IMG/VR virus record: IMGVR_UViG_3300026512_000002
Location: 1 to 64,000 of that record
DNA: 64,000 nt
Strand: one strand, 5' to 3'
Shown: in pieces, positions 13,766-52,259 of the stretch
How positions within the stretch are numbered: the stretch's first letter is position 1
Layout: each line of letters opens with the position of its first letter
Notes under the pieces: model-generated
The model's input: the letters and a program-made list of their open reading frames with translations, nothing else
What the model was told of the DNA's origin: nothing
Database searches by the model: none
Position numbers and translations under genes: made by a program

Positions 13766-14112
13766 AAGTTATTTAATAATGAATCGTGCATTGGCAAGTG
13801 TTTCCGGCGGTTCATAGCATAGAATGCTACTTATAGGAAACAACACACATTTGTGTGTTCCATTGTAAAGTTGTAGCTCTGGTAGGAAGGAGCAGTGAGC
13901 GGACATTGTGTGTCGAAACATGTCGCGGCTCTTGGTAGAAATACCAGCGGTAATCAATCCGTCAGAACACGTAAACATGGCTGACTACCATGATTGCTGG
14001 AGTTGCTATCCTAAAAGCAACTCTTGAGTAAATATATACAACCCTATCTGCGTTTGCGATAGGGTTGTATATCATTAAGAAAAGAGGTTGATCCCCTCTT
14101 TTCTTTTTTTTT
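13766..14112 (+). ncRNA. Putative structured early ncRNA (~350 nt)
   Basis: TATATTAT at 13752; GC-enriched; helices include a perfect 15-bp stem 14034-14048/14058-14072; terminator AAGAAAAGAGG/CCTCTTTTCTT plus T-tract. Confidence 0.65.
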
Positions 14113-19342: not shown

Positions 19343-19357
19343 TATATTATACTATTG
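19343..19357 (+). promoter_or_regulatory. Early (virion-RNAP-type) promoter YATATTAN-N6-G
   Basis: TATATTAT-actatt-G. The same motif with G at +7 occurs at 18315, 18842, 22395(-), 28699, 29516, ~43317, 51179 and ~62530. Confidence 0.65.
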
Positions 19358-20237
19358 TATGGCGGAAATATTTTACGAAACGTCAATACTATGGGAAAGC
19401 GTATCCCTAAAAAAAACAGGCCGCACTGGCGTACCAGGAACACCAAGTAGAGATCTTGGTCAACAAAAAAATCCGTTTGGCCAACGAAAATGATCCATGT
19501 TGTCTGGGAGTATTAGTATGCTCCATTGAAGGACAGTCTCTGGTGATAATGGCAAAAGGTCGAAAGGCCTGGAAAGAAGACGAAATTCGTAACAATGTCT
19601 AAGATAATGGCATTGGGGTATAAAGGGCGGTGGCCTGGAAGTCCTACGATATAAGTCTTTTTTACATAGGTGTATCTTTGATATATTTATGTAACGCTTT
19701 TTCCGTTCAAATGATGAGAAAAGCTATGCTTAATGGCGAAAGCCAAAAAGTAAGCTTTAAGATCATCAATATTGATCGGGTGAAGCAACTCCTACATAAT
19801 AATGATTGGACAAGTGCCATTGGGCACGAAGATGTCGCAATCATTGTTTCTAAAGAATTGGGAATGGAGGTTAAACATAACCGAATTTCCCATTCTTTAG
19901 AAAAGGAGGATGTCTTGATTTTAAGGCAGTATTTCGGAGGGCGTTTGCCCGAAGGAACTACTACCTTAAATGAAGATCAGCTCAAGTTATTGAGCTGGGT
20001 AGAAATTACTCTTAGCAAGTAATTTCTATTTATCCTTCTAAGCTAACAGTTTAATTCGGTTTGACTAACCGAAGTATATTGTTAGTAGGAGTGGAAACAA
20101 AAAAACCTAATAGGTCGGCCAGGTAGGAATGGCCGTTGACTAGACATAGTCTTAAAGAGAGTTAGTCACTCTCAATATTCCGATCCATCAAAAAAAAACA
20201 CCACCCGTTCTGGGTGGTGTTACTAATCCTTTTTTTT
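19357..20237 (+). other. Highly structured early transcript enclosing acrIII-1 (~320-nt 5' and ~200-nt 3' folded regions)
   Basis: Early promoter, continuous helices, 5'/3' end pairing (19359-19372 with 20174-20188), terminator AACACCACCC/GGGTGGTGTT. Confidence 0.7.
19678..20022 (+). CDS. acrIII-1: AcrIII-1 viral ring nuclease (DUF1874; degrades cA4, anti-type III CRISPR)
   Basis: MIYLCNAFSVQM, SAIGH (catalytic His), NRI, LEKED and GGRLPEG match the SIRV1 gp29/STIV B116 family; TTG start after AGGTG. Confidence 0.9.
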   Translation: MIYLCNAFSVQMMRKAMLNGESQKVSFKIINIDRVKQLLHNNDWTSAIGHEDVAIIVSKELGMEVKHNRISHSLEKEDVLILRQYFGGRLPEGTTTLNEDQLKLLSWVEITLSK

Positions 20238-28441: not shown

Positions 28442-28706
28442 TTTCCCTCCGTTAAAAAAGATTTATTTGTAACTATATGTTATCAATCATATTAATTAGT
28501 CACATATATGTAACTTGGCAAGTTTACATTGTCATACTAAATGTCTCCCACAATATATGTAGAGGTTATCAGTTTGTAAAAATTTATTATAGTTTGTTAA
28601 TGAATATGATACATGATTATAGAAATAATATGTAATTAATTAATATATAAAATTATACTATCATTAGTCTATAATAGCATAATAGCTATATTTAAACATA
28701 TATTAA

Positions 28707-29373
28707 GGTGTTGTAGTAGGACATATATACGAGGTGATCGTTTTATATGATCCGTAAATGTTTGAGCATGATAGTCAACGATCATGTTAATTTACAACTA
28801 CAAACATCTATCTAAAGCCAGCATAGATGTAAAACTTAATGCTGGGTAGACGTAATAGTTCCATTGGGGAGTGATTTACGCTAAGTTCGGATAGAAGGTT
28901 GGATTATGAGTTGTGTGTTACGCAATGAATATGAAAACTAGGAATATGAACTTAAGGCACCTCATGAGTATAACTTCTCATAATTGGTGTTTGAATATAC
29001 TGGATACTAGAGAAAAGTGTCCAGTATGTGGTGAAACCACCACTTGTTTAGCCGTAATGGTTACTCAAGAAGGTGGTCTAACCACTTCACTTAAAGAGGA
29101 GTGCCCTAGTTGTTTTAAAAAAAGAACTGGGTCTTCTTTAAGCGAAGTTATAACACTAGACTATTGGGATATAGTCTAGTATCACCAATATGACCAACAG
29201 TCTATAATGGTCATAGAACGCTTAATTCCGGCAACTAATAGGGATTCGCAGTAATAGGCGTTAGTGGTAACACCACAAAGGAGCTATAAGAAATAGCTGA
29301 TGATGAGTCTACTTGTCTGTAGTGGATAATTCAAAGGGAAGCAGTTGATCAACTATTCCCATTTCTTTTTTTT
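28707..29373 (+). ncRNA. Large structured early RNA (~660 nt), possibly carrying a Zn-ribbon ORF
   Basis: TATATTAA-N6-G (28699-28713); many helices (28997-29008/29016-29027; ACTAGACTAT/ATAGTCTAGT; CTTAAAGAGGA/TCTTCTTTAAG); terminator GGGAA..TTCCC plus T-tract. Confidence 0.7.
28946..29179 (+). CDS. Possible small Zn-ribbon protein embedded in structured RNA
   Basis: KCPVCGE...ECPSCFKK paired CxxC motifs; start codon uncertain. Confidence 0.45.
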   Translation: MNLRHLMSITSHNWCLNILDTREKCPVCGETTTCLAVMVTQEGGLTTSLKEECPSCFKKRTGSSLSEVITLDYWDIV

Positions 29374-29591
29374 TATTATATATAATAAAAATTGTATGGT
29401 AAAATATTTTATAATAGCATGGAATTAGATAAAAAACATACAAATCTCTAAAGTACAAATATTAGGATTGTGTAAAGAATATTGTTGAAAATCGTAATAG
29501 TTTAATGTTCGATTACATATTAGTTATATGATTGTAATTGTGCAATCAACGTGCGAGCGTTACTCGTTGAATTTTTTTTAAAGGAGGAATT

Positions 29592-29714
29592 ATGAAATAT
29601 TCTGATTTTAAAAAAAGACTGGCAGAAATGTCAGCCTTAGAGAAATCCATTTACTTAACTGCGTCACTGCAGTCAAGTAAATGGATTTCTATTCATCTAA
29701 AATATTTTAGATGA
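29592..29714 (+). CDS. 40-aa small protein (MKYSDFKKRLAEMSALEKSIYLTASLQSSKWISIHLKYFR), absent from the ORF track
   Basis: Strong SD AAGGAGG; own early motif (29516) and terminator (29720-29744). Confidence 0.6.
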   Translation: MKYSDFKKRLAEMSALEKSIYLTASLQSSKWISIHLKYFR

Positions 29715-29814
29715 ATAGAGGGGGGTAACCCCCATTTTTTTTTTCGCATTCACTATATAATAATTGTGTTTTCATAGAAAGTTATTAACCAATTAATTAA
29801 AAAAAAATCTTTTA

Positions 29815-51192: not shown

Positions 51193-52259
51193 GTTGGATA
51201 TTAGTAATGTTCATAGATTTCTCTATGAAGCATTATCTAGGCGATGTATGCTGCAGAGGGTGAAACCTCTTACGCTATCAATGTCGTTGAACATGATGTG
51301 GATAAGGAATTTATCATAACACAAAGTATCTGACCGTCAAGGAAATGACGTTAACACCCGCTAGGATAGCGTAAAGCCTATGGCTGTAAACGGTAACTGC
51401 CGCAGCAAGTCAGACCTAGTTGGTTATTGGCGTAACATATTCATCGAATATATTTGAATATGTTTATAGTTAGACACACATGAAGTGTGTATTATTGATA
51501 TGAAGACATCCCCATGTTTCCACAAATGGTGAGGTGTGTATACTTGAGATAATATGTATGGAATGGAATATGTTGAGTTATGTTTTGCTTGATATGTTCA
51601 TGTGTTAAACTATGAATATGTTCGTATATAGTATGAATATTGTTATTAGAAGGACAACTATAAACCCGTTCACGGTTGTAACGTGTAATCGTTCTACTTA
51701 TGTTTTGGTAGATACGAAGGTGTGAGAAAAGTAGGATATAAACTACTTCACCAACTCCAGATAATAATGGGGGGACATGCGGTCTTAAAACGTATCGGTT
51801 ATTTCAAATAACCGGGTTGGTAACCTAAAACCTGGCTAGCCGAAGCCAATGTATAAATGAAACTATCATATATTGTGTTATGATAGTGGATTATGGTAGG
51901 ATTGGGCACCCTTGAGTATTTTCGGATACTCTTAATTGTCTATGGTCATAAAAACAGGTCGAACATGCGACATGACCATGATGCTCTAACAAAGCATCAA
52001 GGCGGTTTTCATAACGCCATGTTTTATCCTCAGAAAATCGAGGGGACGGTGGTCCTTAAACATTTGACCAAGTCATTGGTCAAAGTATAAGTGAAGTTGT
52101 TGCTGGCGAGTAATGATTGATCAAATGGCAGGATTGGACATCCTTGAGTATTTTCGGATACTCTTAATTGTCTATGGTATGGGGTGCTAGTCAGGAGTAT
52201 TTGACTAACCATGGTGTTTCGCAAAACATCAAGACAATATGTCGAGCCCCCTTTTTTTT
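51193..52259 (+). ncRNA. Very large structured early ncRNA (~1.07 kb) with a duplicated 54-nt module
   Basis: TATATTAA-N6-G (51179-51193); no convincing ORF; GAAA and UUCG hairpins; repeat 51893-51946 vs 52125-52178; GGGG..CCCC plus T-tract end. Confidence 0.75.

What the first reader, a model, noticed from the sequence alone, without database searches (positions are those of the whole stretch)
28707..29373. ~660-nt folded RNA overlapping a CxxC..CxxC Zn-ribbon ORF
Seen: continuous hairpins from promoter to terminator. The frame 28946-29179 encodes KCPVCGE...ECPSCFKK, and several of the Cys codons lie in stem arms (29016-29027; CCTAGTT/AACTGGG). This matches the acrIII-1 unit: long folded UTRs around a small structured CDS. 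Inference: a second armoured mRNA, and thus a candidate new anti-defence protein by architectural association.
Basis: partly seen in the sequence, partly recalled or inferred. Interest (0 to 1): 0.7.

Follow-up and report, generated by a model that had tools for sequence, protein, structure and literature searches.

The report
Hyper-folded early phage mRNA cassette
A jumbo phage from a hydrothermal vent carries a self-contained ~660-nt gene unit whose RNA is folded into hairpins from end to end, coding part included. It encodes an orphan zinc-ribbon mini-protein, and the same promoter/leader/trailer scaffold is re-used elsewhere in the genome around a different small gene.

Summary
Window 28713-29374 (+) is a promoter-to-terminator unit that folds far better than shuffled sequence (z -8 to -11). 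It has no Rfam match.

The frame is very likely coding. A second copy on the minus strand (227.7-kb genome, 114690-115463) keeps the promoter and 5' leader (300 nt, 99.7% identical) and the 3' trailer and terminator (157 nt, 88%). It replaces the ORF with an unrelated 104-codon ORF that starts at the same ATG. The window ORF is 71 codons and carries two CPxC knuckles.

- **Open frames:** both are improbably open (50/20000 and 16/20000 shuffles).
- **Codon choice:** both are hyper-structured through codon choice (synonymous-permutation z -6.5 and -8.0).
- **Start site:** both pair their first codons with the shared SD/AUG.
- **Trailer:** its differences are compensatory or fall in loops.

Five of 72 small ORFs in the genome show codon-driven structure of this kind, and one of them is the bona fide acrIII-1 gene. 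At least eight hyper-structured units, some without a convincing ORF, sit behind a motif that matches the AR9/phiKZ virion-RNA-polymerase early promoter. The phage encodes split multisubunit RNA polymerases.

So "armoured early mRNA" is supported as architecture. "Anti-defence protein" remains guilt by association: both cassette ORFs are orphans and no relatives or RNA data exist.

The parts
28673..28706 (+). Promoter-like two-box motif: AATAGCA, 18 nt, then ATATATTA (28698-28705) plus A. The predicted transcript start is G28713, 6 nt further on.
   Evidence: It has the same register as AATCGTA-N18-ATATATTA before the acrIII-1, ORF40, ORF86 and other units. It matches the AR9 virion-RNAP early consensus AAATATATATTAT-(6N)-G (PMC5312081). 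Homology with copy 2 begins at 28671-28674. Activity has not been tested.
28713..28963 (+). The 251-nt folded 5' leader, the conserved 5' module. It contains a 22-codon uORF (28747-28815) behind a 9-nt Shine-Dalgarno GAGGUGAUC (28731-28739). AAGG at 28954-28957 is the likely SD of the main ORF. CACCUC at 28958-28963 is complementary to the leader's GAGGUG.
   Evidence: It is 99.7-100% identical to copy 2 over 28671-28970. Fold z is -3.6, with sense -69.0 against antisense -50.7 kcal/mol. The sequence was read.
28964..29179 (+). ORF1: 71 codons plus TAG. It is an orphan protein with two CPxC knuckles (C19PVC22G, C47PSC50) and a hyper-structured CDS.
   Evidence: This frame is open while the other five frames carry 3-10 stops. 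Only 50 of 20000 shuffles are as open. Dinucleotide-shuffle z is -8.8 and synonymous-codon permutation z is -6.5. AF2 single-sequence pLDDT is 55, with a knuckle / beta-hairpin / knuckle-helix topology. There are no homologues.
28950..28992 (+). Hairpin that buries the SD and the AUG. Its 3' arm is supplied by codons 3-9 of ORF1.
   Evidence: The probability that SD..AUG pairs with downstream bases is 0.75 in copy 1 and 0.83 in copy 2. The mean is 0.27 for 203 control fusions of the same leader to other genes, and only 2.5% and 0.5% of controls reach these values.
28971..29216 (+). Variable insert: the part replaced in copy 2 by an unrelated 318-nt insert that carries a 104-codon ORF.
   Evidence: Logan unitigs of the source run show both inserts at equal depth (17.0 and 17.1) and the shared flanks at about 40.
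28995..29029 (+). A 14-bp hairpin inside the CDS. Its 3' arm holds the first CPVC knuckle codons.
29084..29148 (+). A 65-nt, nearly continuous hairpin inside the CDS. It holds the second CPSC knuckle codons.
   Evidence: the only Rfam echoes are sub-threshold miRNA-precursor-like matches
29217..29374 (+). Conserved 3' module: four hairpins, then the terminator hairpin at 29336-29360 and a T-run.
   Evidence: It is 88% identical to copy 2. All 49 predicted pairs are kept in both copies. Three pairs changed on both sides (GC>AU, AU>CG, CG>UA) and two reliable pairs (helix 7) changed compatibly on one side; the tool lists two further one-sided changes in a doubtful long-range helix. The remaining differences lie in loops. 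With only two sequences the statistics are weak.

Best explanation
This is a monocistronic, promoter-to-terminator transcription unit of a phiKZ/AR9-like jumbo phage. It is probably transcribed early by the injected virion RNA polymerase. It yields a ~660-nt mRNA that is base-paired almost throughout and encodes an orphan 71-aa zinc-ribbon-type protein.

The promoter, the 251-nt leader, and the trailer with its terminator together form a reusable expression scaffold. A second locus has the same scaffold around an unrelated 104-aa ORF that starts at the same ATG.

Selection acts on the RNA fold as well as on the frame:
- codon choice builds the hairpins;
- each ORF's first codons pair with the shared SD/AUG, so initiation is gated or throttled;
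- changes in the trailer are compensatory.

Shown here: the fold, the duplication with ORF swap, the improbably open frames, the codon-level structure, start-site occlusion, class membership with acrIII-1, and the promoter motif.

Inferred: early timing; that the fold serves to stabilise the RNA and shield it from single-strand-specific RNases and from guide-RNA pairing (type III CRISPR, which the phage's acrIII-1 implies its host has); and that the protein acts in host takeover or counter-defence.
For: - **Fold:**
- **Second copy:** conserved flanks and a swapped ORF, with homology running from the promoter box to the T-run. Both inserts are at equal depth in the raw-run unitigs.
- **Coding:** open frames at 50/20000 and 16/20000 shuffles. 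Other frames carry 3-13 stops. There are two CPxC motifs in a proteome with 0.6% Cys.
- **RNA-level selection:** synonymous-permutation z is -6.5 for ORF1, -8.0 for ORF2 and -9.6 for acrIII-1, against +1.1 to -2.6 for six control genes. Only five of 72 small ORFs are outliers. Sense MFE is always lower than antisense. The trailer shows covariation. The neighbouring ORF40 hairpin shows two compensatory double changes plus a frame-keeping indel pair in another metagenome.
- **Start occlusion:**
- **Low accessibility:** 12-nt unpaired stretches with P>0.1 occur at 1-6% of positions, against 14% in 40 control genes.
- **Early promoter:** the two-box motif at 14 or more of 15 matches occurs 6 times against 1 in the reversed-sequence control, and all six precede hyper-structured RNAs. 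The AR9 consensus is in PMC5312081. Split RNAP genes were found.
- **Target structure and type III detection:** target RNA structure lowers type III detection in vitro (PMC8682760).
Against: - There is no transcript, ribosome or protein evidence, because no RNA run holds the locus.
- There is no homologue outside this one metagenomic genome. Conservation therefore rests on two paralogues and covariation on two sequences; the shuffle control gives 44/500.
- ORF1's codon score (0.11) is below that of long genes (0.375 +/- 0.084) and only about 1 SD above shadow ORFs.
- Its own promoter matches only 13/15 of the two-box motif, which alone is not above the control.
- Long perfect stems could be RNase III substrates, which would cut the RNA rather than protect it.
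- Some class members seem non-coding, so the RNA itself may be what matters.
- The AF2 model has low confidence.
Confidence: 0.55

Rival explanations
1. It is a structured non-coding RNA. The RNA itself is the effector, for example a decoy or sponge for an RNA-binding or dsRNA-binding host factor, and the ORF is incidental or only vestigially translated.
For: - Class members such as 112944-112740 (-) (205 nt, z -13.4, only an 11-codon micro-ORF), 13766-14112 and 22381-22072 (-) lack convincing ORFs.
- ORF1 and ORF2 are orphans with low codon scores.
- The SD is weak (AAGG) and buried.
- The fold is strongest exactly where the 'CDS' lies.
Against: - Two unrelated inserts both stay open from the shared ATG to within 12-37 nt of the shared trailer. 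The joint chance is about 2e-6.
- There are two CPxC knuckles at zinc-ribbon spacing.
- acrIII-1 is a real protein gene that shows the same hyper-structure.
- The ORF40 variant keeps its frame through a compensating insertion and deletion.
Confidence: 0.15
2. It is an ordinary moron or early gene. Its repeated flanks are recombination substrates (PeSL-like shuffling), and its hairpins serve only generic mRNA stability, with no link to defence.
For: - The promoter-to-terminator unit is duplicated with an ORF swap. PeSL cassettes mediate such swaps in T4-like phages (PMC2839356, PMC4122927).
- The unit lies among tail-fibre genes, a plastic region.
Against: - PeSLs are described as small composite terminator/promoter motifs (PMC4122927), whereas these modules are 300 and 157 nt.
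- Generic stability does not explain codon-level structure at z -6 to -10 confined to five of 72 small genes.
- It also does not explain start-site occlusion rebuilt by two unrelated ORFs.
Confidence: 0.2
3. It is a DNA-level feature (cruciforms, palindromic recombination or replication signals), an adaptation to high temperature, or an assembly artefact.
For: - The antisense strand also folds well (z -8.1).
- The sample comes from a hydrothermal vent.
- At 70 C these RNAs stay 55-57% paired, against 26-29% for control genes.
Against: - The sense strand is more stable in every segment, and the sense fold uses 20-21 G-U pairs.
- The structures are bounded by a promoter motif and terminators.
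- Proteome composition (IVYWREL 0.393, about 34 C; formula recalled from memory) points to a mesophilic host.
- Only early-type units are affected, not ordinary genes.
- Independent unitigs of the raw run reproduce the sequence exactly.
Confidence: 0.05

Closest known systems
Early (virion-RNAP) transcription units of AR9 / phiKZ-related jumbo phages
   Same: - An extended AT-rich promoter, ATATATTA(T)-6N-G(+1).
- A phage that encodes split beta/beta' RNA polymerase subunits.
- Small early genes of unknown function.
   Different: - The extra upstream box AATCGTA 18 nt before the core was not seen in the AR9 passages read and was not checked in other phiKZ-related phages.
- The motif is absent from the five nearest relatives.
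- I know of no report of early mRNAs hyper-structured through their coding parts, and two literature searches found none.
- Timing has not been measured here.
PeSL (promoter-early stem-loop) mobile regulatory cassettes of T4-like phages
   Same: Repeated regulatory sequences (promoter and terminator) flank unrelated small ORFs and can mediate their exchange by homologous recombination.
   Different: - The modules here are 300 and 157 nt and include a long leader and trailer that fold and appear to regulate translation.
- Only two copies exist.
- The phage is not T4-like.
The acrIII-1 (DUF1874 / STIV B116-like ring nuclease) unit of the same genome, window 19357-20237
   Same: - The same promoter type.
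- Long folded UTRs.
- Codon-driven hyper-structure.
- Raised GC3.
- An SD buried in a stem.
- A hairpin plus T-run terminator.
   Different: - ORF1 has no sequence or family relation to AcrIII-1.
- The UTR sequences are unrelated.
Large ornate phage-associated ncRNAs (ROOL, GOLLD) and other Rfam families
   Same: Size of about 600-800 nt, phage location, and dense secondary structure.
   Different: - No Rfam model matches, even at E 10.
- This RNA carries a statistically supported ORF.
- Its middle part is interchangeable.
Translation-initiation occlusion hairpins (RNA thermometers, translationally coupled phage genes)
   Same: The SD and AUG are sequestered by pairing with the first codons.
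   Different: - Here the occluding arm is re-invented by two unrelated ORFs on one shared leader.
- The trigger that opens the hairpin is unknown.

Membership tests
Any curated RNA family (Rfam 15, including ROOL, GOLLD, riboswitches, group I/II introns) | Covariance-model score at or above the gathering threshold | tested here: not met
   There are 0 matches in the whole window at gathering thresholds. At E<=10 the only matches are sub-threshold miRNA-like hairpin echoes.
Zinc ribbon / rubredoxin-like knuckle proteins | Two CPxC(G)-type knuckles separated by a beta-hairpin | tested here: inconclusive
   C19PVC22G and C47PSC50 are present. The AF2 model places strands 29-34 and 41-46 between them, but pLDDT is 55. 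Pfam RUBY_RBDX scores 17.3 bits against a cut-off of 26.5. Metal binding cannot be tested here.
AcrIII-1 / DUF1874 ring nucleases | Match to PF08960 | tested here: not met
   ORF1 and ORF2 do not match. The gene at 19630-20019 matches at E 1.2e-12.
phiKZ/AR9-type early (virion RNAP) promoter | Extended AT-rich consensus ...ATATATTAT-(6N)-G(+1) | tested here: met
   ACATATATTAA-GGTGTT-G at 28696-28713. The motif is common in this 28% G+C genome (52 hits against 31 in the reversed control, 46% of them intergenic). It is suggestive, not proof.
phiKZ/AR9-type early (virion RNAP) promoter | Transcription early in infection, independent of protein synthesis | not testable with these tools
   No RNA run holds the locus.
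phiKZ-like (Chimalliviridae-type) jumbo phage | Split multisubunit RNA polymerase genes | tested here: met
   Rpb2_6 at 117930-119381; Rpb1_2 at 97692-98105 and 154140-154277; Rpb1_5 in 149684-151531.
phiKZ-like (Chimalliviridae-type) jumbo phage | Nuclear-shell protein (chimallin) and PhuZ tubulin | tested here: inconclusive
   There is no Pfam tubulin match. No shell protein was recognised among ten 580-660-aa ORFs. The record is 89% complete and the proteins are very divergent.
Intrinsic terminator | G+C-rich hairpin followed by a U-run | tested here: met
   GGGAAGCAGUUGAUCAACUAUUCCC at 29336-29360, then AUUUCUUUUUUUUU. It is conserved in copy 2 with changes only in the loop.
PeSL cassettes | Short composite early-promoter/stem-loop repeats flanking variable ORFs in T4-like hyperplastic regions | tested here: not met
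   The concept is shared, but the modules are 300 and 157 nt, there are only two copies, and the phage is not T4-like.
Anti-defence protein | Inhibition of a defence system, or homology to a known inhibitor | not testable with these tools
   No homology was found. Function needs an experiment.

The most novel reading that the evidence does not exclude
The phage runs a small regulon of 'armoured' immediate-early RNAs. There are at least eight units behind one virion-RNAP promoter type, and one of them is acrIII-1. Their end-to-end base-pairing, built partly by codon choice, would hide them from RNA-guided (type III CRISPR) recognition and from single-strand-specific collateral RNases.

The ORF1/ORF2 scaffold would then be a plug-in chassis: promoter, gated leader, trailer and terminator. 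Different small counter-defence ORFs get swapped into it, and each is re-tuned to re-form the start-site hairpin. For a phage whose DNA may be shielded in a compartment, mRNA would be the exposed target, so hardening the first transcripts would be a new layer of counter-defence.
Probability: 0.2. Interest if true: 0.85.

Novelty: new variant of a known kind. Interest (0 to 1): 0.62.

Why it matters
If the fold is protective, this is RNA-structure-based evasion of RNA-targeting immunity by a DNA phage. It would act on the very transcripts that must be expressed first, a known anti-CRISPR among them.

It would also offer a sequence-only way to find new early or counter-defence genes in uncultured jumbo phages: look for the early promoter together with codon-driven hyper-structure.

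The two-copy scaffold is a natural experiment. It shows a coding sequence being re-tuned to an existing regulatory RNA: start-site occlusion rebuilt by unrelated codons. That bears on how new phage genes are recruited and regulated.

Even on the modest reading, it documents protein-coding genes whose synonymous sites are dominated by RNA-structure selection (z -6 to -10). I know few such cases outside RNA viruses.

Tried and rejected
**RNA families and relatives**
- Rfam at gathering threshold and at E<=10, and a tRNA/tmRNA scan, found nothing.
- blastn against 50,697 phage records found no match.
- Exact 24-26-mers from both modules had no hits in IMG/VR. In JGI metagenomes they hit only the source contig.
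- Logan run search found only the source sample.
- X2 and X3 hold a roughly 89%-identical relative of a structural gene and the ORF40 unit, but not the ORF1 or acrIII-1 units.
- The nearest phages share only 35-39% terminase identity. They have no DNA match to the element and lack the two-box promoter motif.

**Proteins**
- ORF1, ORF2 and ORF86 are orphans.
- The exhaustive HMMER search gave only a spurious WD40-repeat hit.
- Pfam, PHROGs, PDB and the ESM Atlas gave nothing usable.
- AF2 single-sequence pLDDT of 55 was too low for a fold search.
- ORF1 and ORF2 are not homologous.

**Promoter**
- The word TAATAGCAT is not a promoter signal.
- Two-box matches at 13/15 are no more frequent than in reversed sequence (19 against 15). 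Only matches of 14 or more are informative.

**Phage type and host**
- Chimallin and tubulin were not found.
- The attempt to find a host through ribonucleotide-reductase relatives in genomes failed.

**Rejected readings**
- Thermophily as the cause is unlikely.
- A DNA-level or assembly-artefact origin is unlikely.

**Caveat**
- With a 297-nt identical 5' module, short-read assembly may have swapped which insert sits at which locus. This does not affect the conclusions.

Full report
**Source.** The window is the first 64 kb of a 227,696-bp IMG/VR virus record: 28% G+C, CheckV completeness 89%, contig Ga0256842_1000004 from a hydrothermal-vent metagenome. It encodes a terminase, a major head protein, tail fibres and several split beta/beta'-like RNA polymerase pieces. 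That places it among phiKZ/AR9-like jumbo phages. Its nearest relatives share only 35-39% terminase identity.

The stretch 28707-29373 folds to -216.5 kcal/mol, against -157 +/- 7 for dinucleotide shuffles (z -8.3), and 64% of bases are paired. It is a G+C island in AT-rich spacers. No Rfam family matches and there is no tRNA. Unexpectedly, the coding part carries the strongest structure (z -8.8). The leader scores -3.6 and the trailer -2.8.

**A second copy decides the coding question.** The genome holds one more copy on the minus strand at 114690-115463.
- The first 300 nt are 99.7% identical. This segment runs from the promoter-like box at about 28673 through the leader to ATGAGTA.
- The last 157 nt, the trailer and terminator, are 88% identical.
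- The 246 nt between them are replaced by an unrelated 318 nt.

Both inserts are open from the shared ATG (28964): 71 codons in copy 1 and 104 in copy 2. They stop 37 and 12 nt before the shared trailer. The other five frames carry 3-13 stops. Dinucleotide shuffles of the inserts are as open in only 50/20000 and 16/20000 trials. ORF1 has two CPxC knuckles in a proteome with 0.6% Cys. The two proteins are unrelated. Raw-run unitigs show both inserts at equal depth and the flanks at double depth, so these are two loci in one genome. It comes out in favour of coding.

**The RNA fold is selected as well.**
- Permuting synonymous codons, which keeps the protein and the codon usage, gives z -6.5 for ORF1 and -8.0 for ORF2. 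Six ordinary small genes give +1.1 to -2.6.
- In every segment the sense strand folds better than the antisense, and the sense fold uses about 20 G-U pairs. This points to RNA rather than DNA.
- In the trailer all 49 predicted pairs survive 19 differences. Three pairs changed on both sides, two reliable pairs (helix 7) changed compatibly on one side (the tool's further two lie in a doubtful long-range helix), and the rest of the differences lie in loops. With two sequences the shuffle control is weak (44/500). Slid controls give 40-52% pairing and no double changes.
- The AAGG Shine-Dalgarno and the AUG are buried in a hairpin whose 3' arm comes from the first codons of each unrelated ORF. The pairing probability is 0.75 and 0.83, against a mean of 0.27 for 203 control fusions. 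Only 2.5% and 0.5% of controls reach these values.

**The class.** A genome-wide scan found a handful of comparably folded places. Among 72 small ORFs, exactly five have synonymous-permutation z of -5.5 or lower: ORF1, ORF2, the neighbouring 40-codon ORF (29592-29714), a 73/86-codon ORF at 108.9 kb, and the acrIII-1 homologue (PF08960, E 1.2e-12). All five have raised GC3 and low codon scores.

All sit behind a motif AATCGTA-N18-ATATATTA-N7-G. Matches at 14 or more of 15 positions occur 6 times, against 1 in reversed sequence, and each precedes a hyper-structured RNA that ends in a hairpin plus T-run. ORF1 and ORF2 match 13/15 in the same register, and the homology between the two copies starts at that box. 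The core equals the AR9 virion-RNAP early consensus AAATATATATTAT-(6N)-G(+1) (PMC5312081). I count eight units, 205-881 nt long, with z from -4 to -15. Two or three of them lack a convincing ORF.

For the ORF40 unit, a variant in another metagenome shows two compensatory double changes, one mismatch repair, and an insertion/deletion pair that keeps the frame. There too, hairpin and frame are both maintained.

**Interpretation.** The unit is best read as an early, monocistronic, hyper-structured mRNA for an orphan zinc-ribbon-type protein, built on a leader/trailer scaffold that the phage uses twice.
- These RNAs offer 3-5 times fewer accessible 12-nt stretches than ordinary genes.
- Target structure is known to depress type III CRISPR detection in vitro (PMC8682760).
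- The phage carries acrIII-1, so its host presumably has cA4-signalling type III immunity.
- From my own knowledge, nucleus-forming jumbo phages are reported to remain sensitive to RNA-targeting CRISPR. Whether this phage forms a nucleus is not shown.

Shielding and stabilising the first transcripts is therefore a reasonable purpose, but it is an inference. Proteome composition argues against thermophily as the cause. Long perfect stems might instead be RNase III sites. The anti-defence role of ORF1 rests only on association with one annotated class member.

**Limits.** There is no RNA, ribosome or protein evidence. There are no relatives outside this genome. The AF2 model has low confidence. 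Promoter activity and timing are untested.

Noticed in passing
window 29530-29744 (+): This is a neighbouring mini-unit: early-type promoter (AATCGTA-N18-ACATATTA), an AAAGGAGG SD, a 40-codon ORF (29592-29714) containing a 22-bp hairpin (29641-62 with 29669-90), and a GGGGG/CCCCC terminator. Whole-unit z is -10.6.

Two other metagenomes (a vent and a marine sediment) hold it at about 96-99% identity (X2 2 mismatches and 1 gap in 188 nt; X3 6 and 2 in 162 nt), although a structural gene of the same relative is only about 89% identical. One variant has two compensatory double changes, one mismatch repair, and a frame-preserving insertion/deletion in the loop.
   Followed up: partly
window 19357-20237 (+): This is the acrIII-1 (DUF1874) unit, 881 nt with z -14.5. 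The Pfam match starts before the first ATG. The likely start is TTG at 19678 behind AGGUG, and both lie in a 15-bp hairpin. X2 and X3 relatives of the phage show no trace of this unit.
   Followed up: partly
window 28731-28815 and 28958-28963 (+): The shared leader holds a 22-codon uORF (MIRKCLSMIVNDHVNLQLQTSI) behind GAGGUGAUC, a 9-nt match to the anti-SD and by far the strongest ribosome-binding site in the unit. CACCUC directly upstream of the main AUG is complementary to that GAGGUG. This could be a switch between leader translation and main-ORF initiation. It cannot be tested, because the two copies are identical here.
   Followed up: no
window 13766-14112 (+) and 22381-22072 (-): Two more hyper-structured RNAs (z -5.9 and -4.1) sit behind perfect 15/15 two-box promoters and end in terminators. 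They contain only ORFs of 29-32 codons and may be non-coding or encode micro-proteins.
   Followed up: partly
window 51193-52259 (+): An ORF-poor stretch of about 1.07 kb (G+C 0.35-0.40, fold z -3 to -5) lies between an early-like promoter (ATATATTAA-TTAAAT-G) and a T-run. It is a candidate long non-coding RNA and has no Rfam match.
   Followed up: partly
genome 108873-109293 (+) and 112944-112740 (-), outside the window (L096): These are the two most extreme units (z -14.9 and -13.4). The first encodes an orphan Cys-rich 73-aa protein behind GGAGG. The second holds only an 11-codon ORF behind AAGGAGG.
   Followed up: partly
genome 69000-73500 (+), outside the window (L095): A block of three orphan ORFs (259, 178 and 802 aa, no Pfam match) has low codon scores and sustained sense-strand structure. 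It also contains repeated copies of an early-like promoter context (68257 and 69079 are identical).
   Followed up: no
genome 104800-108200 (+) and 102195-102411 (-), outside the window: A long ORF (105850-108300, 816 aa) and its neighbours contain many tandem 72-nt (24-aa) repeats of the form '..TTPEL..YISKY.LS..GELK'. They were seen while listing promoter-word hits.
   Followed up: no
genome 143320-145131 (-), outside the window (L104): The phage encodes a GroEL/Cpn60-like chaperonin (PF00118, E 2.5e-29).
   Followed up: no
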